IMG/VR virus record: IMGVR_UViG_3300032236_001613
Span: 248,001-312,000 of that record
Length of the DNA stretch: 64,000 nucleotides
Strand: one strand, 5' to 3'
Shown: positions 1 to 16,870 of the stretch, piece after piece
Numbering within the stretch: the first letter of the stretch is position 1
How the letters are laid out: each line of letters begins with the position of its first letter
Made by a program: the position numbers and the translations under genes
The notes under the pieces: model-generated
The model's database searches: none
The model's input: the letters and a program-made list of their open reading frames with translations, nothing else
What the model was told of the DNA's origin: nothing

Positions 1-1929
1 TATGAAGAACGCCATAGCTGGAAGCTTGATTCAGTTGCTGAAGATGAACTTGGTGAGCGTAAAACACAGTACGAAGGTACACTTGACCAATTGTATAACA
101 ATGATTTTAAAACATTTATTGAGTACAATAGACAAGACTGCGCAATCTTAGAAAAACTCGATAAAAAATTAAAGTTTATTGACTTAGCTAACACAATTGC
201 ACATGAAAATACTGTGCTACTTCAAACTACAATGGGCGCCGTTGCTGTTACCGAACAAGCTATTATTAATGAGGCACATAGTTTAGGGTTGATTGTTCCT
301 AGTCGTACTAAACAAGATGACAAGGACATTACCGACGACGATGATGGTCCATCAGATACACAAGCAGCAGGTGCTTATGTAGCATATCCTAAAAAAGGAT
401 TACATGATTGGATTGGATCAATGGACATTAACAGTCTGTATCCATCTGTTATTCGTGCTTTAAATATGGGTCCCGAGACAATTATCGGTCAGCTAAGACA
501 AGAATATACTAAGGCAGAAATTTCTGCTAAAATGGCAAAAGGATCTAGTTTTGCTGCTTCTTGGGAAGGCAAGTTTGGAAGTAATGAGTTCGAACTTGTT
601 ATGTCTAAAGACATTGCACAAGACATAACTGTCGATTGGGAAGATGGCAAAAGCGATGTACTAACCGGTGCACAGATTTATTCTTTAATCTACGAAAATA
701 ATAATCCTTGGCTGTTAAGTGCAAATGGTACTATTTTTACTGTAGAGAAGGAAGGAATTATTCCTGGCTTGCTAGCACGTTGGTATAAAGAGCGTAAAGA
801 ACTTCAAAAGAAATTAAAAGCAGCAATTGAAGCAGGAAATAAAGTCGAAGAAGAGTACTGGGATAAAAGACAGCTAGTTAAGAAAATTAACTTAAACAGT
901 CTTTACGGTGCAATTCTTAATCCTGGTTGCAGATTTTTTGATAATCGAATTGGGCAGTCAACAACATTAACTGGTCGTCGAATTGCTAGACATATGGCAT
1001 CAAAAATTAATGAAATTATTACCGGCGAATATAATCATGTCGGTAAAGCTATCATTTACGGCGATACTGACTCTGCATACTTTAGTGCTTACAGTACGTT
1101 AAGAAATGAAATCAATAAAGGAGTTATTCCTTGGGATAAGGATACTGTAATTCAACTTTATAATACTGTAGCTGAAGAAGTTAACAACACATTTCCTCAA
1201 TTCATGTTAGATGACTTTCATTGCCCTAAGAAGCGTGGTGAAGTTATTAAAGCAGGACGAGAAATCGTTGCTATTAAAGGACTGTTTATTACTAAAAAAC
1301 GATACGCTGTTCTTTATTATGATAAAGATGGTAAACGTCAAGACCTTGGTGGAAAGCCTGGTAAAATTAAAGCCATGGGCCTAGATCTTAAAAGAAGCGA
1401 CACACCAGAATTCATGCAAGAGTTCCTTAGCGAAATTCTAAATAAAGTACTCAACGGTGCAGGTGAGGATGAGATTTTAGAAAGGATTTCTGTCTTTAGA
1501 ACTGAATTTAAATCACGTCCAGGTTGGGAAAAAGGCAGCCCTAAAAGAGCAAATAACATTACCGATTATCAATCGAGAGAAGAAAAAGCCGGTAAAATTA
1601 ATATGCCAGGACATGTTAGAGCAAGTATTAATTGGAATACATTACGTAGAATGAACGATGACAAATATTCATTACAAATCGTTGATGGTATGAAAGTTAT
1701 TGTTTGCAAACTCATTGATAATCCAATGGGGTTTACTAGCGTGGCGTATCCAACGGACGAACAAAGACTACCAAAATGGTTTCAAGAGCTACCTTTCGCT
1801 CATTCAGAGATGGAAGGTGTCATTATTAACAATAAGCTAGAAAATCTTATCGGAGTTCTTGAATGGGATTTGAACTCAACTAAACAGGACTCAACATTTG
1901 GAAGTTTATTTTCGTTTGGATCAGAATAA
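1..1929 (+). CDS. Family B DNA polymerase (T4 gp43-like), 5'-truncated by the window edge
   Basis: The frame is open from base 1 (YEERHSWKLD...). PolB motifs: ExoIII YNRQD, region II DINSLYPS, region III KINLNSLYG, region I YGDTDS, KKRY. Confidence 0.97.
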   Translation, partial: YEERHSWKLDSVAEDELGERKTQYEGTLDQLYNNDFKTFIEYNRQDCAILEKLDKKLKFIDLANTIAHENTVLLQTTMGAVAVTEQAIINEAHSLGLIVPSRTKQDDKDITDDDDGPSDTQAAGAYVAYPKKGLHDWIGSMDINSLYPSVIRALNMGPETIIGQLRQEYTKAEISAKMAKGSSFAASWEGKFGSNEFELVMSKDIAQDITVDWEDGKSDVLTGAQIYSLIYENNNPWLLSANGTIFTVEKEGIIPGLLARWYKERKELQKKLKAAIEAGNKVEEEYWDKRQLVKKINLNSLYGAILNPGCRFFDNRIGQSTTLTGRRIARHMASKINEIITGEYNHVGKAIIYGDTDSAYFSAYSTLRNEINKGVIPWDKDTVIQLYNTVAEEVNNTFPQFMLDDFHCPKKRGEVIKAGREIVAIKGLFITKKRYAVLYYDKDGKRQDLGGKPGKIKAMGLDLKRSDTPEFMQEFLSEILNKVLNGAGEDEILERISVFRTEFKSRPGWEKGSPKRANNITDYQSREEKAGKINMPGHVRASINWNTLRRMNDDKYSLQIVDGMKVIVCKLIDNPMGFTSVAYPTDEQRLPKWFQELPFAHSEMEGVIINNKLENLIGVLEWDLNSTKQDSTFGSLFSFGSE

Positions 1930-1984: not shown

Positions 1985-2716
1985 ATGAAATCATATTTGC
2001 AAGATATTGTAAAACACACACATAGTTTAGGTATTGATTTGGCAAAGATTACAGGCACTGACGAAAGTACTGTTATTATGGCTGTTGCATCCGACAATTC
2101 GGTTATTGTCGAAGGTAAGTTTAAAGAAGTAGTTCCAGAATTTTCCGGAACATTCGGAATGCCAAACTTAGATAAGTTGAATACCATTCTTAATATTCCC
2201 GAATACGAAAAGGATGCTAAGATTACATTGTCTCATAGAACAGACGAAGAAGGTACAACTATTCCTGCTGGTATCCGCTTTGAGAATACTAACAGCGACT
2301 TTGTTAACGAATATCGTTTTATGACAACTAAGTTGATTAATGAAAAGCTAAAGCCCCTTAAGTTTAAGGGAGTTAAGTGGAACGTAGATTTTAGTCCAGG
2401 ACTTGTTAGCTTACAAAGACTAAAGTTCCAGTCTCAAGCGAACCGCGACAAGACTACTTTTGTTGCTAAAACTGACAAAGGTGCACTAAAGTTTTATTTT
2501 GGCGACCCTTCAACTCATGCCGGCGACTTTGTGTTTGAACCTACTGTAACTGGTTCTATTGCTCGCGCATGGCAATGGCCTGTAAGTGCAGTTATTAGCA
2601 TTTTAGATCTTCCTGGTGATAAAACCTATAAGATCAGTGACGAAGGTGCAACAATGATTACTGTTGATTCTGGTATTATTGAGTATAGCTACATTATTCC
2701 TGCTCAGACTAAGTAA
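1985..2716 (+). CDS. Probable DNA polymerase sliding clamp (gp45-like)
   Basis: 243 aa, clamp-like size and alternating beta/alpha pattern, ends YSYIIPA, lies directly after the polymerase. Confidence 0.6.
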   Translation: MKSYLQDIVKHTHSLGIDLAKITGTDESTVIMAVASDNSVIVEGKFKEVVPEFSGTFGMPNLDKLNTILNIPEYEKDAKITLSHRTDEEGTTIPAGIRFENTNSDFVNEYRFMTTKLINEKLKPLKFKGVKWNVDFSPGLVSLQRLKFQSQANRDKTTFVAKTDKGALKFYFGDPSTHAGDFVFEPTVTGSIARAWQWPVSAVISILDLPGDKTYKISDEGATMITVDSGIIEYSYIIPAQTK

Positions 2717-4194
2717 TGGAACAAGATAATTTAACTGTTAAACAGAAAGATTATGCTGTATTTTTACCGGCAATATCTGGATTTTACGCTACCTTTATAG
2801 GAAAGCAGCGTATTAATAATGATTATGTTGACCCTGCAAGATTTCCTGCAGGGTTAACTGATATGGAACAACTTAATTGGTTAAATCCTACAAAAGCATT
2901 ATTTCCTTATAAATGGTCATTGTATTCAGGCGGTCATGCAAACTTAGATCTTTCTAAAAAAGATCCAAATGAAGATATGGTTCGCAACAGAGATCCAGGT
3001 AGCCTAATATTGGGCGACTCAGGTGGATTCCAGATTGCTAAAGGTCTTTGGGAGGGCGATTGGCATGCTAATTCAGGATGTCCAAAAGCACAGCAAAAAC
3101 GTGAAGCAGTTCTTAAATGGCTCGATGGTATAGCCGATTATGGAATGATCCTCGATATCCCAACATGGGTTATTCATGATAAGGTAGCTAATTCTAAAAT
3201 CGGTAATTTTGCAAATTCACAAGAACTTGTAGATGCTACAAAATTTAATAACGATTATTTCATTAATAATCGTAAAGGTGTTAAAGAAGGTGGCGCAAAA
3301 TTACTAAACGTATTGCAAGGCGATAATCACACTGCTGCCGATACTTGGTATCAGACAATGAAAGTCTATTGCGATCCTAATGTCTATCCTAATCGTCACT
3401 TCGACGGATGGGCAATGGGTGGACAAAATATGTGTGATGTTCACTTAGTGCTAAAGCGTTTAGTTGAGTTAAGATACGATAATTTGCTACAACAAGGTGT
3501 TCATGACTGGATGCACTTTTTAGGAACTAGTAAACTAGAATGGGCTGTACTACTTACAGTTATACAAAGAGCTGTTAGAAAATATGTTAATCCTAATTTT
3601 ACTATTAGTTTTGACTGCGCAAGTCCTTTCTTAGCAACTGCAAATGGGCAAGTATATCATCATATTGATTTACCTAATAAAAAGAAATGGTGCTATCGAA
3701 TGAGTCCAATTGCTGACGATAAAAAGTATTCAACGGATACTAGAAACTATAGAGATGCAGTTCTACAAGATGGATTAATTTATCATTTCGATGAGAGTCC
3801 AGTAAGTAAAATTTTACAAATGAAAGATATATGCTATTATAAACCCGGAGACCTAAATAAAGTAGGTAAAGAAGGAAAGACTAGTTGGGATAGCTTTAGT
3901 TATGCTCTATTGATGAGTCATAATGTTTGGATGCATCTTACTGCGGTACAGGAAGCTAACAGAAAATTCGATGCTGGTGATCATCCTGCAATGATGCGAC
4001 GTAGTACTGGCGACGAAGAATATTTTGAAGATATTGTTGAAGCTATCTTTGCTGCACCTGACAAGGAAACTAGTTTAGAAATTATTGAAACATATAGCGA
4101 TTACTGGATGGAAATTGTTGGTACAAGGGGATTTAAAGGTAAAAAAACCGTAAATTCAAACACAATGAAAAATGCATTATTTGAGGAAGTTTAA
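2716..4194 (+). CDS. dpdA: tRNA-guanine transglycosylase-like DNA base-exchange enzyme (DpdA family)
   Basis: TGT motifs LGDSGGFQ, MILDIP, VLQG, MHFLG, SFDCASP; clustered with folE, queD and queE. Confidence 0.8.
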   Translation: MEQDNLTVKQKDYAVFLPAISGFYATFIGKQRINNDYVDPARFPAGLTDMEQLNWLNPTKALFPYKWSLYSGGHANLDLSKKDPNEDMVRNRDPGSLILGDSGGFQIAKGLWEGDWHANSGCPKAQQKREAVLKWLDGIADYGMILDIPTWVIHDKVANSKIGNFANSQELVDATKFNNDYFINNRKGVKEGGAKLLNVLQGDNHTAADTWYQTMKVYCDPNVYPNRHFDGWAMGGQNMCDVHLVLKRLVELRYDNLLQQGVHDWMHFLGTSKLEWAVLLTVIQRAVRKYVNPNFTISFDCASPFLATANGQVYHHIDLPNKKKWCYRMSPIADDKKYSTDTRNYRDAVLQDGLIYHFDESPVSKILQMKDICYYKPGDLNKVGKEGKTSWDSFSYALLMSHNVWMHLTAVQEANRKFDAGDHPAMMRRSTGDEEYFEDIVEAIFAAPDKETSLEIIETYSDYWMEIVGTRGFKGKKTVNSNTMKNALFEEV

Positions 4195-4736
4195 TGAAAA
4201 GAGATTACACAACTGGCGTAGCCGAAAACATTACATTTTTCCTAGGCACAGAAGTTGAAAAGACTCCTGCTTATGGAATGAAAACTCTGTTTGTAACTGG
4301 ATTGCAAACTATAGAAGAAATTGAAAAAATACTTAACGATCCGTTTACTAGTATTAAGGAACCTGTTAAGCACATTTTCTTTGGAGCTAATCATAGCTTT
4401 AATCCTAATTTTAATGACTACAAGAACTGGGCAGCATGGGAAAACATGATCACACACTTTCTTGAAAAAGATTATTGGTGTAGTTTAGATATTCCTTTGT
4501 CAGCTGTTGAAGAATTTAATGATGGTGGATTAAACGATTACGCTAATTTTATTCCACAAATTATGGTTACAATTCCTTATATTAAGTTGTGGAATTACAA
4601 CACTATGATTAAGATTGACGATAAGGATTTTAAAGCAACTAATCCCGGTGTTTGGACACATAGTTTGCACGAACTTAAGGACAGGAATAAGTTTACAGAT
4701 TGGTCAGAATACAAAAACGATCAGGTGATTAAATGA
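4194..4736 (+). CDS. Hypothetical protein in the deazaguanine cluster
   Basis: 180-aa ORF, translationally coupled to dpdA (TAATG) and to queD (ATGA); GAGGA RBS. Confidence 0.8.
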   Translation: MKRDYTTGVAENITFFLGTEVEKTPAYGMKTLFVTGLQTIEEIEKILNDPFTSIKEPVKHIFFGANHSFNPNFNDYKNWAAWENMITHFLEKDYWCSLDIPLSAVEEFNDGGLNDYANFIPQIMVTIPYIKLWNYNTMIKIDDKDFKATNPGVWTHSLHELKDRNKFTDWSEYKNDQVIK

Positions 4737-5104
4737 ATAAACAAGACATGATGATTTGGGTAACTTTCCAAAAAGAAGGAATTCATTGTTATCCTGCGGC
4801 AGCAACTGATCCAAAACTAGAAGATGTTAGTTTTTTGGGATTTCCGCATAGGCATATTTTCCATTTTAAGATATGGATTGAAGTTTTTGATGACGATCGA
4901 GAAATCGAATTTATTCAATTTAAACGTTGGTTGCAAAACTTATATAAAGATAGTACACTAAGTTTAGATCATAAGAGTTGTGAAATGATTGCTAAGGATT
5001 TACATCAAGTAATTCACAACAAATATGGCGCCAGAAATATCTGGATTGAGGTAAGTGAAGACAACGAAAATGGTTGCTTCATTAAATTTAACAATAGATG
5101 GTGA
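4733..5104 (+). CDS. queD: QueD-like 6-carboxytetrahydropterin synthase (T-fold)
   Basis: H-C, HRHIFHF zinc-His motif, REIEF and SCEMIA, ends EVSED; sits in the folE/queE cluster. Confidence 0.7.
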   Translation: MNKQDMMIWVTFQKEGIHCYPAAATDPKLEDVSFLGFPHRHIFHFKIWIEVFDDDREIEFIQFKRWLQNLYKDSTLSLDHKSCEMIAKDLHQVIHNKYGARNIWIEVSEDNENGCFIKFNNRW

Positions 5105-5115
5105 GGAAATATCAA

Positions 5116-5352
5116 ATGGCACGAGATTGGAATAACAAGCACTTGCGTATGAAGCCCGAAGTTTCACAAATTTTCGAGGATCTAGAAGAATATCTAGATT
5201 TTTGTAAGTACTTTGGACACGTTTACAACGAAGCCGATCTTTATAATGATCGAGGCCCGTGGGGAGAACTGCAGCGAGCCAAGAATGGTAAGCATGTTAG
5301 AAACAATTGGTCACAGTTTCTCAAGAGAAATTCTGCACCACGTTACAACTAA
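5116..5352 (+). CDS. Hypothetical protein
   Basis: ATG 5116 with GAGGA RBS preferred over the ORF-track start at 5098; fills the operon gap. Confidence 0.7.
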   Translation: MARDWNNKHLRMKPEVSQIFEDLEEYLDFCKYFGHVYNEADLYNDRGPWGELQRAKNGKHVRNNWSQFLKRNSAPRYN

Positions 5353-5355
5353 TCT

Positions 5356-6519
5356 ATGAGAAAGTTATTTTATATGGGCCTTGAACCTTACAAGGCCCGC
5401 TATACTTTGCAGTTGCAGGAATGGAACCGTGCTGTTTTCGAACAGCGCGGTATTAACTATGTTATAGTACCCGGCGAAACACTTAGTAACGATCAAGCAA
5501 TTGTTACCGGTCAGGTACTGGATGCACATGGTCGTAGCTACTTTGGCATGAGCCAACTAATGAATCTTGTGCGTATGATGAAAGCAGGAGAAGTTACAAA
5601 TGAAGATGTTGTCTACTTTGAAGACATGTTTCAACCAGGCATCGAAAGTTTGCCTTACATTCTGGATCAAGTACCCAACGAACTTCGTCCAAGAATCTTT
5701 GTTCGTTGTTTGGCTCAGTCTATCGATCCTGATGACTTTGTACATGTTTGGGGCATGAACCTTTGGATGGGTCTATATGAAAAAATGGTAGACTCATTTG
5801 TTGACGGTGTACTTGCTTCTAACGAAGAAATGGTTGCACATTTAAAAATTGCCGGTTGGACTGCTCCAATGTATAATATTTCAGGACTTGCGTTCGGTAA
5901 GGAAGAAGTACGCAATAGAGTTAAAGCAATTAAGCCATTTAGCGAACGTAGGATGCGTGTAGCTTTTTCGGCTCGTTGGGATCAAGAAAAACAGCCCGAC
6001 TTTTACATGGACTTAATTGAGAAGTTTAATAATCCATCAGTAGAGTTTGCTGTGTTTAGCGGCAGTAAACTAAAGAGCAATAACAATAGCTACATGCAGC
6101 GCACTAGAGACTTAGAATCTCGTGGTTTACTTAAGATTTATGAAGATCTTGAGAAGAACGAATACTACGAATTGCTAAATGATACTAGAGTATTGTTTAA
6201 TTGTGCACTACAAGATTGGGTTAGCAACACAGTAAGCGAAGCAGATGCATTAGAATGTAACGTTCTATTTCCAGCGTATCGCAGTTTTCCAGAAACATTT
6301 GCAAATGATCATACAAGAATGTATATTCCATGGTCTATAGATGATGCATTAATTAAGCTGGATCGACTTTTAAGATTTAAAGACCCTAAAGTTGGAGTTA
6401 TTAGTGATTGGACCAATGGTACAATTGGACGTATCTGTGATATCATCAGCGGCAACGGCGAAGAATGGCGGCGAGACAGTGTAGATTACAGAAAGCATCT
6501 AAGAGATAAAAAATATTAA
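5356..6519 (+). CDS. GT-B fold glycosyltransferase (GT4-like)
   Basis: C-terminal nucleotide-sugar binding pattern FSARWDQEKQP ... ALQDWVSNTVSEA ... LFPAYRSFPE. Confidence 0.75.
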   Translation: MRKLFYMGLEPYKARYTLQLQEWNRAVFEQRGINYVIVPGETLSNDQAIVTGQVLDAHGRSYFGMSQLMNLVRMMKAGEVTNEDVVYFEDMFQPGIESLPYILDQVPNELRPRIFVRCLAQSIDPDDFVHVWGMNLWMGLYEKMVDSFVDGVLASNEEMVAHLKIAGWTAPMYNISGLAFGKEEVRNRVKAIKPFSERRMRVAFSARWDQEKQPDFYMDLIEKFNNPSVEFAVFSGSKLKSNNNSYMQRTRDLESRGLLKIYEDLEKNEYYELLNDTRVLFNCALQDWVSNTVSEADALECNVLFPAYRSFPETFANDHTRMYIPWSIDDALIKLDRLLRFKDPKVGVISDWTNGTIGRICDIISGNGEEWRRDSVDYRKHLRDKKY

Positions 6520-6530
6520 AAGGATAACAA

Positions 6531-7223
6531 ATGTCTGATGTAGGTAAAAATATAAGCGAAGTAATCCGTGATCGTATTGAACGTGCTGGTGAAAGATTTC
6601 ACAGTAACGACAACATTTCTAAATTCATTTATAATGATAAAGAAATTGATCAACTTGTTGACGAAGTTACTGAACGTTTTCAAGGTGTATTAGAAAGTTT
6701 AATTATTGATACTAAACACGATCATAATACAAATGATACTGCACGTCGTGTAGCTAAAATGTTTGTTAGAGAAACTTTTAGTGGACGTTATCGACCAGTA
6801 CCTAAGGTAACAGCTTTTCCTAACATGGGGTACAAGAGTTTGTATACTACAGGTCCTATTAGTATTCGTAGCACTTGTGCACATCATTTCCAAAATATTG
6901 TTGGTAAGTGTTGGGTAGGCATTGTGCCTGAGGATGAAGTAATTGGTCTTAGCAAGTTTAATCGAATTGTTCATCATATTTGCGAAAGGCCGCAGATTCA
7001 AGAAGAAATGACTACACAAATTGCCGAAGCTCTCAAAGAATATGCTAAAACTGAGAATATTGCTGTTGTAGTTAAAGCAGAGCACCACTGTATGACACAA
7101 AGAGGCGTTCGCGAACACGAAAGCGATATGACTACAGCAATTATGTTAGGCGCTTTTTGGTGCGATCCTGCACTAAAGAAAGAATTTTATGATATTTGTC
7201 TAAGTATGAAAGGACATGGATAA
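6531..7223 (+). CDS. folE: GTP cyclohydrolase I
   Basis: TARRVAKM, STCAHHF, GLSKFNRIV, RPQIQE, HHCMTQRGV motifs. Confidence 0.97.
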   Translation: MSDVGKNISEVIRDRIERAGERFHSNDNISKFIYNDKEIDQLVDEVTERFQGVLESLIIDTKHDHNTNDTARRVAKMFVRETFSGRYRPVPKVTAFPNMGYKSLYTTGPISIRSTCAHHFQNIVGKCWVGIVPEDEVIGLSKFNRIVHHICERPQIQEEMTTQIAEALKEYAKTENIAVVVKAEHHCMTQRGVREHESDMTTAIMLGAFWCDPALKKEFYDICLSMKGHG

Positions 7224-7780
7224 TGAATAAACTTTTTGTCGACTACAATGAATATAAATTTCTAATTGCGAAACTCTGTCGTGATATTATGATGTCAGGT
7301 TGGAAACCTGATTATGTTGTAGGGATTACTCGAGGAGGATTACTTCCCGCAGTAATGATTAGTCATTATTTTGATGTTCCGTGCCACACTCTTAAAGTTA
7401 GCCTTCGAGACAGCGGCGATAATGATACAGAATCTAATTGTTGGATGGCTGACCATGCAATTGGGTATAAATTGAGAGACAAGAATGATAAAACTTCAGG
7501 ATTTAGTGATCTCGAAAGTAGAAAAAACATTCTTATCGTTGATGATATTAATGATACAGGTGCTACGTTTAACTGGATATTAAAAGATTGGCCTTCGAGC
7601 TGTTTAGGAGATAATCCTGCGTGGAACGAAGTTTGGAACAATAATGTAAAGTTTTCAGTTCTTGTTGATAACCTCTCAAGCATTGCACAAGTTAAAATGG
7701 ATTATTCAGGAATCGAAATTAACAAAGCAAACAACGATCTTTGGGTAGTTTTTCCTTGGGAAAATTGGTGGTTAAAATGA
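7223..7780 (+). CDS. Type I phosphoribosyltransferase (xanthine/guanine PRT-like)
   Basis: VGITRGG, PRPP-binding ILIVDDINDTGAT, WVVFPWE; start coupled to the folE stop (TAATG). Confidence 0.9.
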   Translation: MNKLFVDYNEYKFLIAKLCRDIMMSGWKPDYVVGITRGGLLPAVMISHYFDVPCHTLKVSLRDSGDNDTESNCWMADHAIGYKLRDKNDKTSGFSDLESRKNILIVDDINDTGATFNWILKDWPSSCLGDNPAWNEVWNNNVKFSVLVDNLSSIAQVKMDYSGIEINKANNDLWVVFPWENWWLK

Positions 7781-8193
7781 ATGATCATATTTTTCCTAGG
7801 TCTTCGAATGATAATATTTTTGCCGGACCTTTTTCTATTAAAGATGCAAATGTTCCATGGACCGATGTATTACAGGAAGATTTTTACGTTGTAGTATACC
7901 GAGACAAATATCCAGTAACCGAAGGACACTTGCTTTTCGTACCTAAATATAATACACTAGTTGCATTGGGATTTGCATTTGATCAGGCTATTCGTTATGG
8001 AAAGTTTATGGTTTCGCAAGAAACATGCTCCGCATTTAACATCGGATTAAATGCTGGTGAAGCAGCAGGTCAAACTATCATGTGGCCACATATACACCTT
8101 ATTCCTCGCAGAGTAGGTGATGTTGATGATCCTGTAGGTGGTGTACGTAACACTATCCCAGGTAAAGGAAATTATAAAAATGAGCAAAATTAA
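7777..8193 (+). CDS. HIT-family nucleotide hydrolase
   Basis: DKYPVTEGHLLFVPK and NAGEAAGQTIMWPHIHLIPR; ATGA overlap at 7777. Confidence 0.9.
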   Translation: MNDHIFPRSSNDNIFAGPFSIKDANVPWTDVLQEDFYVVVYRDKYPVTEGHLLFVPKYNTLVALGFAFDQAIRYGKFMVSQETCSAFNIGLNAGEAAGQTIMWPHIHLIPRRVGDVDDPVGGVRNTIPGKGNYKNEQN

Positions 8194-9034
8194 AGTAGCA
8201 GAATTATTTTACAGTATTCAAGGAGAAGGAAGGTACATGGGAGTACCTTCTATCTTCTTACGTACATTTGGATGCAATTTTCAATGTTCGGGTTTTGGAA
8301 TGCCTAAAGGCGAACGCAGTACAGAAGCTGTTAACATAGATCCTAGTAAATATAAGTCTTATGGCGAGTTGCCATTGGTTAGTACAGGCTGCGACAGTTA
8401 TGCTAGCTGGGATACAAGATTCAAAAACCTTAGTCCTATGCTGACTACAGATAGCATTGCTGAACAAATTGTTGAACTATTACCATATGGTGAATGGCGA
8501 GACGAGCATTTGGTTATTACTGGTGGAGAACCTTTACTAGGATGGCAACGTGCTTATCCAGATTTGTTGAATCATCCTAAGATGAAAAATTTGAAAGAAA
8601 TCACTTTTGAAACAAATGGTACACAAGAACTACATCCAGATTTTAAACAATATCTTAAAGAATGGAATCAGGCTCAATGGCCTCATGGCGGATCTGGAGA
8701 GATTACATTTAGCGTTAGTGCAAAATTAAGTTGCAGCGGTGAATCAAGAGCAGAAGCAATTAAACCAGAAATCGTTTGCGTGTACGAAGAATTTGGTTAT
8801 ACCTATCTTAAATTTGTTGTTGCGACCGATGATGATGCCGAAGAAGCAATTAATACAACAAAGATATATCGAGATGCAGGATTCAAAGGTCCAGTATATC
8901 TAATGCCTGTAGGCGGAGTAGAGAGTGTATACTCACTAAATAATCGCCGTGTTGCTGAATTAGCAATGCGCAATGGTCTAAGGTACAGCGATAGACTTCA
9001 AGTGCCGTTGTTTAAAAATGCATGGGGAACATGA
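8180..9034 (+). CDS. queE: 7-carboxy-7-deazaguanine synthase (radical SAM)
   Basis: ELFYSIQGEG, FLRTFGCNFQC...GCDS, VITGGEP, FETNGT, SAKL, RLQV; ATG 8180 with AAGGA RBS. Confidence 0.92.
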   Translation: MSKIKVAELFYSIQGEGRYMGVPSIFLRTFGCNFQCSGFGMPKGERSTEAVNIDPSKYKSYGELPLVSTGCDSYASWDTRFKNLSPMLTTDSIAEQIVELLPYGEWRDEHLVITGGEPLLGWQRAYPDLLNHPKMKNLKEITFETNGTQELHPDFKQYLKEWNQAQWPHGGSGEITFSVSAKLSCSGESRAEAIKPEIVCVYEEFGYTYLKFVVATDDDAEEAINTTKIYRDAGFKGPVYLMPVGGVESVYSLNNRRVAELAMRNGLRYSDRLQVPLFKNAWGT

Positions 9035-11992: not shown

Positions 11993-13081
11993 ATGGCAGA
12001 AAAAATTTCAGCGAATCGTACCGTTACACCAAACGAAGCCAAAAAGAGCATTCGTAAATGTATTAAAATTAAACGTCCTGTTTTTTTATGGGGCCCGCCA
12101 GGCATCGGCAAGAGCGATATTGTTAAACAAATTGGCAACGAACAGAATCGTGACGTTATTGACGTTCGACTAAGTCTTTGGGAACCTACCGATATTAAAG
12201 GTATTCCTTATTACAATTCTCAACTTAATACTATGAGTTGGGCACCTCCAGCAGAACTTCCAACTGATCCAAATAGTACTGCTATTTTATTCTTAGATGA
12301 GCTTAATTCAGCGGCACCTGCAACGCAAGCTGCAGCTTATCAGTTGGTGTTGAATCGTCGTGTTGGCACTTACCGTTTGCCTGATGGTGTCAGTATCGTG
12401 GCTGCAGGCAACCGTGAAACAGATAAAGGTGTTACTTATCGTATGCCAGCTCCGTTGGCGAATCGTTTCCTTCATCTTGAACTTTCAACTGATTTTGAAG
12501 ATTGGCTCAAATGGGCAACTGACAATATGATCCACGAACAAGTTGTTGGCTATGTTAGCTTTGCTAAACAGGATCTTTACAACTTTGATCCTAAGAGCCC
12601 GAGCCGTAGTTTTGCAACTCCTCGCTCATGGAGCTTTGTAAGCGATTTGCTTACCGATGACGACCTTGAAGATGATACACTAATGGATCTTGTATCAGGA
12701 GCTATTGGAGAAGGACTTGCACACAAATTTATGGCGCATCGTAAAGTTGCTAAACAAATGCCTAACCCAGAAGATATTCTTTCTGGTAAGATTACAAAAT
12801 GCTCAATTAAAGAAATTAGTGCAATGTATTCATTAGGTATTAGTCTCTGCTACGAGCTCAAAGGAGCTGCAGATAAAAAAGCTAAAAATTGGGATGCACT
12901 TGCTGATAATTACTTCCGCTTTTTGATGGATAACTTTCCTACGGAACTTACAGTTATGTCAGCTAAGATTGCATTGACTAATTACAATCTTCCATTTGAT
13001 ACTAGTAAACTTAAAAACTTTGACGAATTCCATGAAAAATACGGTAAGTATATTCTTACTGCAATGGACCAAGCGTTTTGA
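11993..13081 (+). CDS. MoxR-like AAA+ ATPase
   Basis: Walker A GPPGIGKS, Walker B LFLDELN, AAGNR, PLANRF, TPRSW. Confidence 0.92.
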   Translation: MAEKISANRTVTPNEAKKSIRKCIKIKRPVFLWGPPGIGKSDIVKQIGNEQNRDVIDVRLSLWEPTDIKGIPYYNSQLNTMSWAPPAELPTDPNSTAILFLDELNSAAPATQAAAYQLVLNRRVGTYRLPDGVSIVAAGNRETDKGVTYRMPAPLANRFLHLELSTDFEDWLKWATDNMIHEQVVGYVSFAKQDLYNFDPKSPSRSFATPRSWSFVSDLLTDDDLEDDTLMDLVSGAIGEGLAHKFMAHRKVAKQMPNPEDILSGKITKCSIKEISAMYSLGISLCYELKGAADKKAKNWDALADNYFRFLMDNFPTELTVMSAKIALTNYNLPFDTSKLKNFDEFHEKYGKYILTAMDQAF

Positions 13082-13085
13082 TTTG

Positions 13086-13103
13086 TGGGCCCGCAAGGGC
13101 CCA
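13086..13103 (+). terminator. GC-rich GNRA hairpin (weak terminator or mRNA stabiliser)
   Basis: TGGGCCC-GCAA-GGGCCCA; only a weak U-tail follows. Confidence 0.5.
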
Positions 13104-13124
13104 TCTTAATTAAGGAAAAATGTA

Positions 13125-14387
13125 ATGTCAAGTACCGTTATTAAAGATAAAAAAAATAAAAAACCTATTAAAGTTAAAGAATATTCACAGGCTGAAAAAA
13201 ATAAAATAGTCGAAAAACTTGTTGGGGCACGTATTGCATTGTTGCTTAAACATCCGTTTTTTGGCAATATGGCCACACGTCTCACTCTTATCGATGCTAG
13301 CGAATGGTGTCCGACTTTAGCAACCGATGGCCGTAACTTTTATTATAATAACGATTTTGTAAATAAACTCAAACCCAAAGAAGCTGAGTTCGGGTTTGCT
13401 CACGAAGTATTACATAATGTGTTCGACCACATCGGACGTCGTGGTGATCGAGATCCTGAATTATCAAATATTGCTGCCGACTTTGCTGTTAATCAAATAC
13501 TTAAAGATGAAAAAATCGGCGAAGTTCCTAATTTTATTAAAATCTTTCAGGATAACAAATATCGTAGTTGGAGCTACGAAGAAATCTATGAAGATCTAAA
13601 AAAACGCTGCAAAACTATTAATTTGTCTGATCTTGGTGAATTACTTGACGAACACCTTGACGGTGAAGGTGATTCCGAATCCGACGATGATGGCGAAAAA
13701 ATTGACGGCAACGGCAAAGGACGCCCGCGATTTACTGCTGAAGAACGCAAAAAAATCAGAGATGAAATTAAAGAAGCTATGCTTGCTGCTGCACAAGCTG
13801 CAGGCGCAGATAACACACCAGCAGGCATTCAACGAATGATCGGTGATTTTACTGCTCCTAAAATGGATTGGAGAGAATTGCTTCGTTTAAACATTCAAAG
13901 CATTATTAAAAATAATTTTAGTTTTGCTCGTCCTAATCGTAAAAGCCAACAGTGTGGTGCTGTACTTCCTGGTCTTCTTAACGAAGAAACAGTTGATGTG
14001 TGCGTTGCAATTGATATGAGCGGTAGTATTACTAATGCTCAAGCAAAAGATATGCTTAGTGAAGTTAAAGGTATTATGGATGAATATGTTGATTTTAAAT
14101 TAACTGTTTGGACTTTTGATACTAAAGTTTACAACATGCAAATTTTTACTAACGATAATGCTGACGATATTGCATCATACGTTCCTATGGGCGGTGGCGG
14201 CACGTCTTTTGAGTGCAATTGGGATTTTATGAAGGATAACGAAATCGAGCCTAAACGTTTTGTTATGTTTACCGACGGATATCCTTGCGGTGGTTGGGGA
14301 GATGAAGATTATTGTGAAACTTTGTTTATCATTCACGGTACCGAAAGTATTACTGCTCCGTTTGGACAAACTGCTTATTATAAATAA
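13125..14387 (+). CDS. Metallopeptidase-like (HExxH) + VWA-like protein (DUF2201-type), MoxR partner
   Basis: TLATDG, AHEVLH, NIAADFAVN, MIDAS motif DMSGS, GGGGTSF, FTDG. Confidence 0.88.
   Translation: MSSTVIKDKKNKKPIKVKEYSQAEKNKIVEKLVGARIALLLKHPFFGNMATRLTLIDASEWCPTLATDGRNFYYNNDFVNKLKPKEAEFGFAHEVLHNVFDHIGRRGDRDPELSNIAADFAVNQILKDEKIGEVPNFIKIFQDNKYRSWSYEEIYEDLKKRCKTINLSDLGELLDEHLDGEGDSESDDDGEKIDGNGKGRPRFTAEERKKIRDEIKEAMLAAAQAAGADNTPAGIQRMIGDFTAPKMDWRELLRLNIQSIIKNNFSFARPNRKSQQCGAVLPGLLNEETVDVCVAIDMSGSITNAQAKDMLSEVKGIMDEYVDFKLTVWTFDTKVYNMQIFTNDNADDIASYVPMGGGGTSFECNWDFMKDNEIEPKRFVMFTDGYPCGGWGDEDYCETLFIIHGTESITAPFGQTAYYK
14379..14386 (+). promoter_or_regulatory. T4-type late promoter
   Basis: Exact TATAAATA upstream of ATG 14399. 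Confidence 0.65.
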
Positions 14388-14913: not shown

Positions 14914-15519
14914 ATGAAACATGTTGGTAAAATGAAAAATAATTCTGCAAGACTAGCAGTAGTCTACAGAACATTACCCGGTGATCCATACAGTGCGCTA
15001 GTTGTCGGAACGCAAGGGTTAGGTGATAGTTATCATGACACATTAATGAATCTTATAGAAAGTCCGGCAGGGCAACAAGCAAATGAACTTGCTGATGTAC
15101 TAGCTACCAGACGTTTTCCAGACGGATCAGTTATGTTAGGATTCTTACATCAAAACAGTCATTTAAAGAAAGTTCCTACTAGCATGGTTCTTATGACTCC
15201 TGACACGCAAACACAAATTCCGCTCGATGAGTTGAATCGCATCATTGCCGAACAAAAAGGTGTTCGTCTAGAGGATCTTGCTGTTAACGACGGTAGTGAA
15301 AAACCTAAAAATACAGCTAAAACTGTAGTAAAAGAAACTACAGATCATACTACTGCTGCTACTGTTCAGGCACCATCACAAGGATTTGATTTGTCGCCAA
15401 CAGAAAAGCGTAGCCGAGCTGATGCTTTATACAAGGAAGCAGCACGGTTACGCAAAGAGGCGGATGCAGAAGATCCACCGAAGAGTAAAAAGAAAGTAGC
15501 TAAAGTCGAGATCGAATGA
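14914..15519 (+). CDS. Hypothetical protein
   Basis: 201 aa; AAGGA RBS. Confidence 0.8.
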   Translation: MKHVGKMKNNSARLAVVYRTLPGDPYSALVVGTQGLGDSYHDTLMNLIESPAGQQANELADVLATRRFPDGSVMLGFLHQNSHLKKVPTSMVLMTPDTQTQIPLDELNRIIAEQKGVRLEDLAVNDGSEKPKNTAKTVVKETTDHTTAATVQAPSQGFDLSPTEKRSRADALYKEAARLRKEADAEDPPKSKKKVAKVEIE

Positions 15520-16001
15520 TCAAATGTATTGTTGCAGTTGATCAAAATCAAGGCATAGGTTTTAACGGATCTATGCCTTGGCCTACTTTAAAAGAAGATC
15601 TAAGTTGGTTTAAAGAAAAAACATTAGATCACATAGTATTAATGGGGTCGAATACTTACCGTAGTTTAGGTAAAAGTTTACCTAATCGTATTAATGTAGT
15701 AATTAGTTCTCAACTACATCCAAAAGCAGATTTTACATTTACAGATCCTATTGATGCAATCGAAACACTAAAAGAAAGATATAATAAAGATATTTACGTC
15801 ATAGGCGGCCAAAAAATCTATGATAGTTTAAAACATTTAATAGAAGTATTTTATGTTACTGAAATTGATTATCAATACAAATGCGATACTTTTTTTAATT
15901 TAAAGTTTGTAAAAGAAAACTTTAATAATATCGAAGAAATTAAAAAAATTGATAGTACAGAAACAACACCATCTTACACCATAAAAGAATACACAAAATG
16001 A
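15516..16001 (+). CDS. frd: Dihydrofolate reductase
   Basis: IVAVDQNQGIG, MPW, EDLSWFK, MGSNTY, LPNRINVV, VIGG, CDTFF. Confidence 0.95.
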   Translation: MIKCIVAVDQNQGIGFNGSMPWPTLKEDLSWFKEKTLDHIVLMGSNTYRSLGKSLPNRINVVISSQLHPKADFTFTDPIDAIETLKERYNKDIYVIGGQKIYDSLKHLIEVFYVTEIDYQYKCDTFFNLKFVKENFNNIEEIKKIDSTETTPSYTIKEYTK

Positions 16002-16870
16002 AACAATATTTAAAAGTACTTAAAGAAGTACTCGAAACTGGAGACGAAAGACCTGATAGAACCGGAGTAGGCACTCTTAGTAAATTTGGCATGCAAATGA
16101 AGTTTGATCTATCTAAAGGATTTCCTGCAGTAACTACAAAAAAACTTGCATGGCGTGCTGTTGTTAGCGAACTACTTTGGTTTATTGAAGGTAGTGGCGA
16201 CGAGCTAAGGCTAAGAGAAATTCTACACGGTGATAGACATAGTAATCAAAAAACTATCTGGACTGATAATGCTAGTGCACCATATTGGGTTAAAAGAAAT
16301 CATCAACGACATCCTGGTGATTTAGGACGTATATACGGAGTACAATGGCGTAGATGGCGTAAACCTGTTATTAGAATTAATAAAGTTGTTTTACATAATC
16401 ACGATCAACTATTAGAATTAATCAACGGTATTAAAGACGATCCTTATAGTAGACGCCATATTTTATCTGCGTGGAATCCTGGTGAAATAGAGCTCATGGC
16501 TCTTCCACCGTGCCATGTAATGTGTCAATTTTATGTTAATAACGGAAAACTTAGTTGTCAAATGTACCAGCGATCAGGTGATTTATTTTTAGGCGTTCCT
16601 TTTAATATTGCCAGTTATTCATTACTAACACATATGATTGCTCAAGTTTGTCATTTAGAGGTAGGAGAATTGATAATTGTTCTAGGTGATGCACACATTT
16701 ACAATAATCATATTGAGCAGGTTAAAGAACAGCTGAATAGAGTACCTTTTCCATTGCCCAAATTAATGCTTAATCCAGATATTGATGTTATAACAGACTT
16801 TGAAATGGACGACATCTCATTAGTTGATTATCAGTGTCACGATACGATTAAAGCTGATATGCTGATTTAA
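15998..16870 (+). CDS. thyA: Thymidylate synthase
   Basis: DRTGVGT, TTKK, ELLWF, YGVQWR, ALPPCH, YQRSGDLFLGVPFNIASY, DAHIY; uninterrupted. Confidence 0.97.
   Translation: MKQYLKVLKEVLETGDERPDRTGVGTLSKFGMQMKFDLSKGFPAVTTKKLAWRAVVSELLWFIEGSGDELRLREILHGDRHSNQKTIWTDNASAPYWVKRNHQRHPGDLGRIYGVQWRRWRKPVIRINKVVLHNHDQLLELINGIKDDPYSRRHILSAWNPGEIELMALPPCHVMCQFYVNNGKLSCQMYQRSGDLFLGVPFNIASYSLLTHMIAQVCHLEVGELIIVLGDAHIYNNHIEQVKEQLNRVPFPLPKLMLNPDIDVITDFEMDDISLVDYQCHDTIKADMLI

What the first reader, a model, noticed from the sequence alone, without database searches (positions are those of the whole stretch)
2716..9034. 7-deazaguanine DNA-modification operon lacking QueC but containing a glycosyltransferase, PRTase and HIT hydrolase
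Established: FolE, QueD and QueE convert GTP to 7-carboxy-7-deazaguanine (CDG); QueC is needed to reach preQ0; DpdA exchanges the base into DNA. Seen: dpdA, queD-like, folE and queE are present in a tightly packed and partly translationally coupled run, with no queC, queF or gat-queC in the window. A GT-B glycosyltransferase, a purine PRTase, a HIT hydrolase and two unknown ORFs are interleaved. Inference: the phage may make a hypermodified, possibly sugar-decorated, deazaguanine, or may use PRTase/HIT to salvage excised guanine or channel deazapurine nucleotides. I know of no characterised glycosylated deazaguanine in phage DNA.
Basis: partly seen in the sequence, partly recalled or inferred. 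Interest (0 to 1): 0.8.

Follow-up and report, generated by a model that had tools for sequence, protein, structure and literature searches.

The report
Deazaguanine DNA-modification cluster with conserved glycosyltransferase
An uncultured 328-kb jumbo phage carries the known QueC-free gene set that replaces guanine in DNA with 7-deazaguanine, plus a glycosyltransferase that travels with this set in seven phage lineages, so a sugar-bearing deazaguanine, never yet described in DNA, is a realistic and testable prediction.

Summary
Window 2716-9034 is a tightly packed, partly overlapping run of nine + strand genes.

- **492-aa protein:** a divergent DpdA3-like DNA transglycosylase. Its model matches TGT, ArcTGT and DpdA at Z 16-20.
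- **"queD-like" gene:** this is DpdL, the proposed 7-carboxy-7-deazaguanine (CDG) decarboxylase. It carries the published LxxxHRHxF signature and is 59% identical to ACP17 DpdL.
- **Missing QueC:** this is not a gap. It is the hallmark of the known 7-deazaguanine (dDG) route of Cellulophaga phage phiST.
- **True QueD:** it lies 37 kb upstream, overlapping a UDP-xylose synthase gene.
- **Glycosyltransferase (GT):** a GT4 enzyme that sits beside DpdA3/DpdL in this clade and in BUCT-ZZ01, ACP17, BUDD/X1, BCSR5, PA5oct-like phages and Phosso. It was not found in phiST, whose DNA holds plain dDG.
- **Sister genomes:** the GT is followed by GalE, heptose-pathway, aminotransferase and methyltransferase genes inside the cluster.
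- **PRTase and HIT:** accessory, in 8 and 5 of 31 full-length loci. The PRTase probably salvages the released guanine.

No glycosylated deazaguanine in DNA was found in the literature searched. The chemistry is unproven. Cultured relatives make LC-MS a direct test.

The parts
2716..4194 (+). DpdA3-like DNA guanine transglycosylase (492 aa), a divergent PA5oct-type branch
   Evidence: GDSGGFQ and SFDCASP motifs, with D101 and D300 invariant in 38 sequences. hhalign to DpdA3 of ACP17/BUDD/BCSR5/phiST: 95.4%, E 1.9e-8. AF2 pLDDT 87.4. Foldseek top three are TGT 6yry 5.9e-7, ArcTGT 1iq8 and DpdA 7ui4. VIA Z 19.6/18.7/15.8 against 11.0 for the next hit. Pfam TGT and DpdA HMMs do not hit.
4194..4736 (+). 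Conserved 180-aa protein of unknown function, a partial beta/alpha barrel
   Evidence: 595 cluster representatives in the 1.8-billion-protein library. A homologue sits in the ACP17 cluster. AF2 pLDDT 94.8. No clear structural relative. QueE recurs among the weak matches, but hhalign to QueE gives 0.8%.
4733..5104 (+). DpdL (QueD paralogue; proposed CDG decarboxylase)
   Evidence: 59% identity to ACP17 DpdL and 31% to phiST CGPG_00067. Motif LGFPHRHIF matches the published DpdL signature LxxxHRHxF. phrog_17812, 8e-34.
5098..5352 (+). Conserved 84-aa protein of unknown function
   Evidence: Found between DpdL and the GT in 79 of 80 sister loci. No family hit. No similarity to the PA5oct ORF at the same position.
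5356..6519 (+). GT4-family (GT-B) glycosyltransferase, a conserved partner of DpdA3/DpdL
   Evidence: The family profile hits PDB GT4 chains (2f9f 3.5e-5, 6eji 1e-4). 14 of 17 family members hit PF00534. Atlas GT4 clusters score 0.97-1.0, and the model of the top cluster has TM 0.7-0.8 to full-length GT4. Homologues lie next to DpdA3/DpdL in ACP17, BUDD, BCSR5, PA5oct, Phosso and BUCT-ZZ01.
6531..7223 (+). GTP cyclohydrolase I (FolE)
   Evidence: PF01227, 5.3e-45.
7223..7780 (+). Type I purine (6-oxopurine-like) phosphoribosyltransferase, accessory
   Evidence: PF00156, 2.8e-13. Nearest PDB chains are purine/HGPRT/GpT enzymes. PRPP loop VDDINDTG. Present in 8 of 31 full-length sister loci. A PRTase also lies in the BUCT-ZZ01 cluster, and a partial one in PA5oct.
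7777..8193 (+). Hint/Fhit-branch HIT protein, accessory
   Evidence: PF01230, 9e-8. PDB HIT proteins such as 3imi at 5e-7. Motif WPHIHLIPR. Present in 5 of 31 full-length sister loci.
8180..9034 (+). QueE-like radical SAM CDG synthase
   Evidence: phrog_2076, 7e-54. NCBIfam QueE models at about 1e-13, below their cut-offs. Conserved Cys at alignment positions C32, C36 and C71.

Best explanation
This is a DpdA3/DpdL-type 7-deazaguanine DNA-modification module extended by a glycosyltransferase.

Proposed pathway:
1. FolE, QueD and QueE turn GTP into 7-carboxy-7-deazaguanine (CDG). QueD is encoded 37 kb upstream, overlapping a UDP-xylose synthase gene.
2. There is no QueC. DpdL is proposed to decarboxylate CDG to 7-deazaguanine.
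3. The DpdA3-like transglycosylase swaps this base for guanine in phage DNA after replication, as in Cellulophaga phage phiST.
4. The GT4 enzyme, fixed next to DpdA3/DpdL, then most likely adds a sugar from an NDP-sugar to the deazaguanine, on DNA or just before insertion. The donor would be UDP-xylose or a host UDP-sugar in this phage. In sister phages it would be UDP-galactose, heptose or amino sugars.
5. The PRTase probably recycles the released guanine to GMP, feeding FolE.
6. HIT and the 180-aa and 84-aa proteins are helpers of unknown role.

Shown: the gene identities, synteny and co-occurrence. Inferred: DpdL activity, the acceptor and position of the sugar, and the roles of PRTase and HIT.
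For: - **Gene identities:**
- **No QueC or QueF:** none in the genome or in the sister loci.
- **QueD:** its CxxxHGY motif is the same type as in phiST and ACP17.
- **Precedent:** phiST has FolE/QueD/QueE/DpdA3/DpdL, no QueC, and dG fully replaced by dDG (PMC10516641).
- **GT linkage:** the GT family lies adjacent to DpdA3/DpdL in ACP17, BUDD/X1, BCSR5, PA5oct, Phosso and BUCT-ZZ01 (66% identity to the window GT) and in all 80 clade loci. It was not found in five DpdL phages, including phiST.
- **Sugar genes:** 30 of 46 loci with 5 kb or more after the GT carry an NDP-sugar gene within 7 kb of it. These include GalE over the NCBIfam cut-off, HldE/HldD-like genes, DegT, a cupin and a TylF-like methyltransferase.
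- **QueD-UXS pair:** QueD overlaps UXS by one base. UXS scores 1e-120 to human UXS1.
- **Other acceptors:** ThyA is canonical, so no hydroxymethyl-pyrimidine acceptor is evident.
- **Experimental hints:** PA5oct DNA resists G-containing restriction sites (PMC12191111). DpdL plus DpdA3 alone failed to give dDG in E. coli.
Against: - No chemical data exist for any GT-bearing phage.
- 7-deazaguanine has no obvious hydroxyl or amine handle at C7, so the attachment site is unknown.
- The window phage has many other sugar genes: six SDR genes and a 1364-aa double GT4 protein. The QueD-UXS adjacency could therefore be incidental.
- UXS is absent from the five other GT-bearing cultured phages checked, PA5oct, ACP17, Phosso, BUDD and BCSR5.
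- The window's own GT scores only E 0.14 on PF00534.
- DpdL activity has never been shown biochemically.
- The GT absences come from a search whose own output warns that an empty answer proves little.
Confidence: 0.5

Rival explanations
1. The DNA carries plain 2'-deoxy-7-deazaguanine, as in phiST. The GT4 enzyme and the nearby sugar genes serve another target, such as virion proteins or the host envelope, and sit here only because of shared early or middle expression.
For: phiST makes dDG without this GT. The window genome has a large separate sugar and GT repertoire. Deazaguanine lacks an obvious glycosylation handle (chemistry, own knowledge).
Against: The GT is adjacent to DpdA3/DpdL in seven otherwise unrelated phage lineages, with different gene orders. 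The order is invariant in 80 clade loci. BUCT-ZZ01 has two GT4 genes flanking DpdA3.
Confidence: 0.27
2. This is a nucleotide-level route, as in tubercidin or toyocamycin biosynthesis. The PRTase joins CDG or 7-deazaguanine to PRPP, and the nucleotide is processed (HIT, kinases, reductase) and incorporated by the phage PolB. The DpdA-like protein plays a minor or different role.
For: FolE, QueD and QueE plus a PRTase without QueC is the tubercidin logic (own knowledge). A PRTase recurs in the deazaguanine clusters of BUCT-ZZ01 and PA5oct. NT5C and kinase genes occur in sister clusters. ADG nucleoside was reported in cells infected by Campylobacter phage CP220 (cited in PMC10516641).
Against: PRTase is present in only 8 of 31 full-length sister loci and HIT in 5 of 31, whereas DpdA-like and DpdL are near-universal. 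The PRTase keeps the DTG loop of 6-oxopurine PRTs, whose Asp contacts N7, which is absent in deazapurines (own knowledge). The catalytic Asp motifs of the DpdA-like protein are invariant.
Confidence: 0.1
3. The GT acts on the free base or a soluble precursor, and the DpdA3-like enzyme inserts an already glycosylated deazapurine.
For: DpdA families are known to shift substrate specificity (PMC10516641). This DpdA branch is very divergent and larger than phiST DpdA3, at 492 against 259 aa.
Against: Known DNA glycosyltransferases act on DNA (own knowledge). There is no evidence for a widened base pocket.
Confidence: 0.08

Closest known systems
Cellulophaga phage phiST dDG system (FolE, QueD, QueE, DpdA3, DpdL; Cui et al. 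2023, PMC10516641)
   Same: The same enzyme set and no QueC. DpdL carries the LxxxHRHxF signature and QueD is of the CxxxHGY type. The cluster lies next to the DNA polymerase gene.
   Different: The window's DpdA is a much larger, divergent branch with no BLAST-level similarity, only hhalign at 95%. phiST has no GT4, PRTase, HIT or 180-aa protein, and has a MazG-like gene instead. QueD is unlinked in the window genome.
Pseudomonas jumbo phage PA5oct (Wroclawvirus) deazaguanine cluster
   Same: Syntenic order: PolB, phrog_12062 protein, DpdA-like (36% identity), GT-like, DpdL (51%), PRTase-like fragment, QueE, 5'-3' exonuclease. Its DNA resists G-site restriction enzymes and a modified G is predicted.
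   Different: FolE, HIT and the 180-aa protein are not seen in the PA5oct locus. The GT is only about 20% identical. The modification has not been chemically identified.
Synechococcus phage BUCT-ZZ01 (Kyanoviridae) cluster
   Same: GT 66% identical. QueE, PRTase, QueD, FolE, DpdA3 and DpdL are all in one cluster.
   Different: It is a T4-like 156-kb cyanophage. Its DpdA3 is the canonical type, and a second GT4 paralogue flanks it. HIT and the 180-aa protein are absent.
T-even phage hydroxymethylcytosine glucosylation (alpha- and beta-glucosyltransferases)
   Same: The logic is the same: a non-canonical base in DNA is further decorated by a phage GT-B enzyme using an NDP-sugar. Some relatives carry the GT layer and others lack it (own knowledge; PMC13216743 listed).
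   Different: The base is a pyrimidine with a hydroxyl handle, made at the nucleotide level. The GT families differ. Here the base is a purine analogue inserted by base exchange.
tRNA queuosine glycosylation (QTMAN/QTGAL)
   Same: A GT4-type enzyme adds a sugar to a 7-deazaguanine derivative in a nucleic acid. A bacterial QTMAN_N cluster appears among the Atlas look-alikes of the window GT, at 0.97 with 180 shared features.
   Different: The acceptor there is the cyclopentenediol of queuosine in tRNA. No QTMAN_N Pfam hit was found in any of 17 family members. This is a lead only.

Membership tests
TGT/DpdA superfamily (DpdA3-like) | TGT-type TIM barrel fold | tested here: met
   AF2 model pLDDT 87.4. 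Foldseek top three hits are TGT, ArcTGT and DpdA. VIA Z 19.6/18.7/15.8 against 11.0 for the next barrel.
TGT/DpdA superfamily (DpdA3-like) | Two catalytic aspartate motifs (DSGGFQ; FDC) | tested here: met
   GDSGGFQ (D101) and SFDCASP (D300) are invariant in 38 sequences. They align to DSGGLQ and SYDS of DpdA3. The DpdA3 profile aligns its DSGG to the DSGSFQ/DSGGFQ of ArcTGT and QTRT1.
TGT/DpdA superfamily (DpdA3-like) | Match to the curated Pfam models PF01702 (TGT) or PF23859 (DpdA) | tested here: not met
   No hit at E up to 10. A PDB sequence profile search was also empty. The protein is too divergent for plain HMMs.
TGT/DpdA superfamily (DpdA3-like) | Profile similarity to named DpdA3 proteins | tested here: met
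   hhalign 95.4%, E 1.9e-8. The DpdA3 HMM hits the PA5oct orthologue at 1.8e-8.
TGT/DpdA superfamily (DpdA3-like) | CxCxxC...H zinc site of tRNA TGTs | tested here: not met
   No CxCxxC motif in the 492-aa sequence. The relevance of this site for DpdA3 is unknown.
TGT/DpdA superfamily (DpdA3-like) | Exchange of guanine in DNA for a 7-deazaguanine | not testable with these tools
   Needs biochemistry or mass spectrometry of the DNA.
DpdL | Homology to DpdL of phiST and ACP17 | tested here: met
   59% identity to ACP17 (E 6e-37) and 31% to phiST.
DpdL | Signature LxxxHRHxF in place of the QueD motif CxxxHGH | tested here: met
   LGFPHRHIF. The signature is as stated in PMC10516641.
DpdL | Context: FolE, QueD, QueE and DpdA present, QueC absent | tested here: met
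DpdL | CDG decarboxylase activity | not testable with these tools
   This activity is unproven even for phiST DpdL.
GT4 / GT-B glycosyltransferase | Match to Glycos_transf_1 (PF00534) and relatives | tested here: met
   14 of 17 family members hit, best 6.8e-12, although the window protein alone scores E 0.14. The family profile hits PDB GT4 chains.
GT4 / GT-B glycosyltransferase | Two-Rossmann GT-B fold | tested here: inconclusive
   The window protein itself was not folded. The Atlas model of the top-scoring look-alike cluster (feature score 1.00; the tool does not establish kinship) has TM 0.70-0.80 to full-length GT4 proteins.
GT4 / GT-B glycosyltransferase | Acceptor is (deazaguanine in) DNA | not testable with these tools
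   Only genomic association is available.
6-oxopurine phosphoribosyltransferase | Type I PRT fold with PRPP loop | tested here: met
   PF00156, 2.8e-13. Loop NILIVDDINDTGAT. Nearest PDB chains are purine PRT, GpT-2 and HGPRT.
6-oxopurine phosphoribosyltransferase | Equivalog-level match to XPRT or HGPRT | tested here: not met
   NCBIfam XPRT 34 bits against a cut-off of 138. HGPRT 20 bits against 150.
HIT (Hint/Fhit branch) | HIT domain and histidine triad HxHxHxx | tested here: inconclusive
   PF01230 at 33 bits, over its cut-off. The motif is WPHIHLIPR, so the first His of the triad is replaced.
Tubercidin/toyocamycin-type deazapurine nucleotide pathway | PRTase as an obligatory core step | tested here: not met
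   PRTase is present in only 8 of 31 full-length sister loci that keep DpdA, DpdL, the GT and QueE.

The most novel reading that the evidence does not exclude
A very abundant clade of roughly 330-360-kb freshwater jumbo phages, together with PA5oct-like, ACP17-like, Xanthomonas, Burkholderia, Sinorhizobium and a T4-like cyano-phage, would carry a glycosylated 7-deazaguanine in their DNA. This would be the first sugar-bearing purine-type base in any genome. The sugar would differ between relatives (xylose, galactose, heptose or amino sugars). A GT4 enzyme working with DpdA3 and DpdL would make it, and the 180-aa QueE-like protein would be a further missing factor.
Probability: 0.4. Interest if true: 0.85.

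Novelty: new variant of a known kind. Interest (0 to 1): 0.72.

Why it matters
All known glycosylated DNA bases are pyrimidines (hmC, hmU, 5-hydroxycytosine). A sugar on a deazapurine would be new nucleic-acid chemistry and would need an unusual attachment, possibly a C- or N-glycoside.

The GT and the conserved 180-aa protein are also concrete candidates for the 'other unknown enzymes' that the discoverers of dDG invoked when DpdL plus DpdA3 failed in E. coli.

The family is very large. The 8000 best candidates were scored for each of DpdA and the GT, and nearly all passed E 0.001, on contigs up to 360 kb or more. The modification would therefore be common in nature. It would bear on restriction evasion, on defence systems that sense modified G (END nucleases, Dag glycosylases), and on sequencing of such DNA. 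Seven cultured phage groups make it directly testable.

Tried and rejected
- **Plain sequence methods:** Pfam, PHROGs, NCBIfam and PDB phmmer gave nothing for the 492-, 180-, 84- and 387-aa proteins. A PDB profile search with the DpdA-like family was empty.
- **Nucleotide similarity:** megablast of the cluster against 50,697 phage records found no match.
- **180-aa protein as a QueE relative:** the structural hints stay in the noise range (Z about 6, TM about 0.5), and hhalign gives 0.8%. Longer family members carry C-terminal extensions, which gave no clue.
- **84-aa protein:** no family hit, and no similarity to the PA5oct ORF at the same position.
- **Vibrio phage 2.275.O:** the 370-aa ORF after its DpdA-like gene does not align with the GT family.
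- **UXS as a conserved partner of the GT:** rejected. It is absent from five other GT-bearing phages.
- **QTMAN_N kinship of the GT:** not supported by Pfam.
- **GT acting on hydroxymethyl-pyrimidines:** unlikely, because ThyA is canonical and sits next to DHFR.
- **Promoter and terminator scan:** counts were at chance level.
- **GT structure prediction:** The window GT was therefore not folded.
- **Moraphage lineage (PMC12619734):** whether the clade equals this lineage could not be settled.

Full report
**Source.** The window is bases 248001-312000 of a 328,068-bp IMG/VR virus record, estimated 92% complete. It is a jumbo phage of about 35% G+C.

**The observation.** On the + strand, after a family-B DNA polymerase cut by the window edge (ORF to 1929) and a phrog_12062 protein (1985-2716), come nine genes:
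- 2716-4194 (492 aa)
- 4194-4736 (180 aa)
- 4733-5104 (123 aa)
- 5098-5352 (84 aa)
- 5356-6519 (387 aa)
- 6531-7223, FolE
- 7223-7780, PRTase
- 7777-8193, HIT
- 8180-9034, QueE

A 5'-3' exonuclease follows further on. With the likely ATG starts, the junctions are -1, -4, -7, +3, +11, -1, -4 and -14 nt.

**Direct family hits.** FolE (PF01227, 5e-45), PRTase (PF00156, 3e-13), HIT (PF01230, 9e-8) and QueE (phrog_2076, 7e-54) are direct hits. The other five proteins had no Pfam, NCBIfam or PDB sequence hit.

**The 492-aa protein.**
- It contains GDSGGFQ and SFDCASP, the counterparts of the two catalytic-aspartate motifs of tRNA-guanine transglycosylases. Both aspartates are invariant in 38 relatives.
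- A profile of its family aligns to a profile of named or annotated DpdA3 proteins (ACP17, BUDD, BCSR5, phiST) at 95.4% probability and E 1.9e-8, across both motifs.
- The DpdA3 HMM hits its PA5oct orthologue at 1.8e-8.
- An AlphaFold2 model (pLDDT 87.4) has bacterial TGT, archaeosine TGT and the DNA preQ0 insertase DpdA as its three best PDB matches. Foldseek gives 5.9e-7 to 7.8e-5. VIA gives Z 19.6, 18.7 and 15.8, against 11.0 for the next TIM barrel.
- The curated Pfam TGT and DpdA models do not hit it, and no CxCxxC zinc motif is present.

It is therefore a divergent branch of the DpdA3 kind.

**The 123-aa 'queD-like' protein is DpdL.**
- It is 59% identical to the ACP17 protein that Cui et al. 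named DpdL, and 31% identical to phiST CGPG_00067.
- It carries LGFPHRHIF, which matches the published DpdL signature LxxxHRHxF that replaces the QueD motif CxxxHGH.
- Cui et al. (PMC10516641) showed that phiST encodes FolE, QueD, QueE, DpdA3 and DpdL but no QueC. In phiST, dG is completely replaced by 2'-deoxy-7-deazaguanine.
- The missing QueC is therefore the expected state for this pathway. QueC and QueF are absent from the whole record and from 80 sister loci.

**The true QueD.** It exists 37 kb upstream, at G000:C1:213387-213917 (PF01242, 5.7e-14). Its CxxxHGY motif is the same as in the QueDs of phiST and ACP17. It overlaps by one base a UDP-glucuronate decarboxylase (UDP-xylose synthase), which scores 1e-120 to human UXS1. 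UvdE and SufC/SufBD-like genes follow.

**The 387-aa protein is a GT4 glycosyltransferase.**
- The family profile hits GT4 chains in the PDB: WbaZ-1 at 3.5e-5 and WlaC at 1e-4.
- 14 of 17 family members hit PF00534.
- Atlas look-alikes are GT4 clusters at 0.97-1.0, and the model of the top cluster has TM 0.7-0.8 to full-length GT4 proteins.

**The GT co-segregates with DpdA3 and DpdL.** Homologues lie directly beside DpdA3 or DpdL in:
- Acidovorax phage ACP17
- Xanthomonas phages BUDD and X1
- Burkholderia phage BCSR5
- PA5oct-like Pseudomonas jumbo phages
- Sinorhizobium phage Phosso
- the T4-like Synechococcus phage BUCT-ZZ01, at 66% identity and with a second GT4 paralogue on the other side of DpdA3

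The family was not found in five DpdL phages: phiST, RHph_I1_18, Ahp1, Bakedbeans and D479. DpdL phages therefore appear to split into GT-bearing and GT-free sets. The one chemically characterised member, phiST with plain dDG, is GT-free.

**The clade.**
- The 8000 best candidates were scored for each of the DpdA-like protein and the GT, and nearly all passed E 0.001. The 120 listed for each are 74% or more identical to the query, on contigs up to 360 kb or more.
- In 80 IMG/VR loci the order PolB, phrog_12062, DpdA-like, (180 aa), DpdL, 84 aa, GT is invariant. A variable segment follows, and then FolE, QueD and QueE.
- The variable segment holds nucleotide-sugar genes. A GalE equivalog, often directly after the GT, scores 309 and 288 bits against a cut-off of 262. 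There are also HldE- and HldD-like heptose genes, a DegT aminotransferase, a cupin, a TylF-like methyltransferase, an NT5C phosphatase and, in single loci, a B12 radical SAM enzyme and a 2OG oxygenase.
- Of 46 loci with at least 5 kb after the GT, 30 carry such a gene within 7 kb.
- In the window phage the segment is empty, because FolE follows the GT by 11 nt. Orthologues of the kinase (49% identity) and the cupin (71%) lie at 202.5-204.4 kb, near the QueD-UXS pair.

**PRTase and HIT.**
- Among the 31 full-length sister loci, PRTase occurs in 8 and HIT in 5, so both are accessory.
- The PRTase is nearest to archaeal and yeast 6-oxopurine PRTs and keeps the DTG loop.
- A PRTase also sits in the BUCT-ZZ01 cluster, and a fragment in PA5oct.
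- The best reading is salvage of the guanine released by base exchange back to GMP and GTP, the pathway's own substrate. This is inference.
- HIT belongs to the Hint/Fhit branch and its first triad histidine is replaced. Its role is open.

**The 180-aa and 84-aa proteins.**
- The 180-aa protein belongs to a large family of 595 representatives and is also found in ACP17.
- It folds confidently (pLDDT 94.8) into a partial beta/alpha barrel with no clear relative.
- QueE recurs among its weak structural matches in three searches, but profile comparison does not support kinship.
- The 84-aa protein is clade-specific and unexplained.

**Literature.**
- Iyer et al. predicted a deazaguanine system in PA5oct.
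- A 2025 preprint reports that PA5oct DNA resists several G-containing restriction sites, and that defence nucleases sensing modified G target the phage. The base was not identified.
- No paper in the searched library describes a glycosylated deazaguanine in DNA or links a GT or PRTase to DpdA.

**Verdict.** The cluster is a DpdA3/DpdL 7-deazaguanine module, which is a known kind, with a conserved glycosyltransferase layer, which is not described. Glycosylation of the deazaguanine is the best-supported reading of the GT. It rests on association only, and the attachment chemistry is unknown.

Noticed in passing
G000:C1:213387-218715 (outside the window; L012:10387-15715): QueD overlaps a UDP-glucuronate decarboxylase (UDP-xylose synthase) gene by one base. 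A UvdE endonuclease and SufC/SufBD-like Fe-S assembly genes follow, and these could serve the radical SAM enzyme QueE.
   Followed up: partly
window 1985-2716: The phrog_12062 protein right after PolB is conserved in PA5oct, Phosso and Vibrio phage 2.275.O. It is annotated as a virion structural protein (by mass spectrometry) in PA5oct, but as a DNA polymerase III sliding clamp in Phosso. The annotations conflict.
   Followed up: no
window 1-1929: The family-B DNA polymerase is cut by the window edge. The whole-genome ORF is 900 aa (G000 247227-249929). In PA5oct the orthologue is split by a homing endonuclease.
   Followed up: no
window 15516-16870: DHFR and a canonical thymidylate synthase (358 bits, over the equivalog cut-off) overlap by 4 nt. 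Gene orientation switches to the minus strand at about 16.9 kb.
   Followed up: partly
window 11993-14387: A MoxR-type AAA ATPase is followed by a DUF2201 metallopeptidase/VWA protein. The pair is conserved at 70-81% identity in sister loci.
   Followed up: no
G000:C1:121400-123500 and 157000-184000: The genome also encodes a 1364-aa protein with two GT4 domains, and five further SDR epimerase/dehydratase genes lie in a sugar-gene region. The phage therefore has glycosylation capacity beyond this cluster.
   Followed up: partly
L093:7010-11167 (Synechococcus phage BUCT-ZZ01): Two GT4 paralogues flank DpdA3 and DpdL in a cultured T4-like cyanophage. The same cluster holds a PRTase, QueD, FolE and QueE. 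This would be a convenient experimental model.
   Followed up: partly
L049:9456-10001 and L049:15595-17100: One sister locus has a 2OG-Fe(II) oxygenase-like gene abutting the GT start and a B12-binding radical SAM gene inside the cluster. These may provide further tailoring, or create a hydroxyl handle.
   Followed up: no
L002:8905-14983 (Vibrio phage 2.275.O): A homologue of the window's DpdA-like protein is linked there to QueF, a YhhQ-like transporter, QueC and a Gat domain. The same DpdA branch therefore also serves a preQ1-type pathway.
   Followed up: no
window 4194-4736: The 180-aa family has a confident predicted fold without clear relatives. QueE keeps appearing among its weak structural matches, although the protein has a single cysteine and no profile similarity to QueE.
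   Followed up: partly
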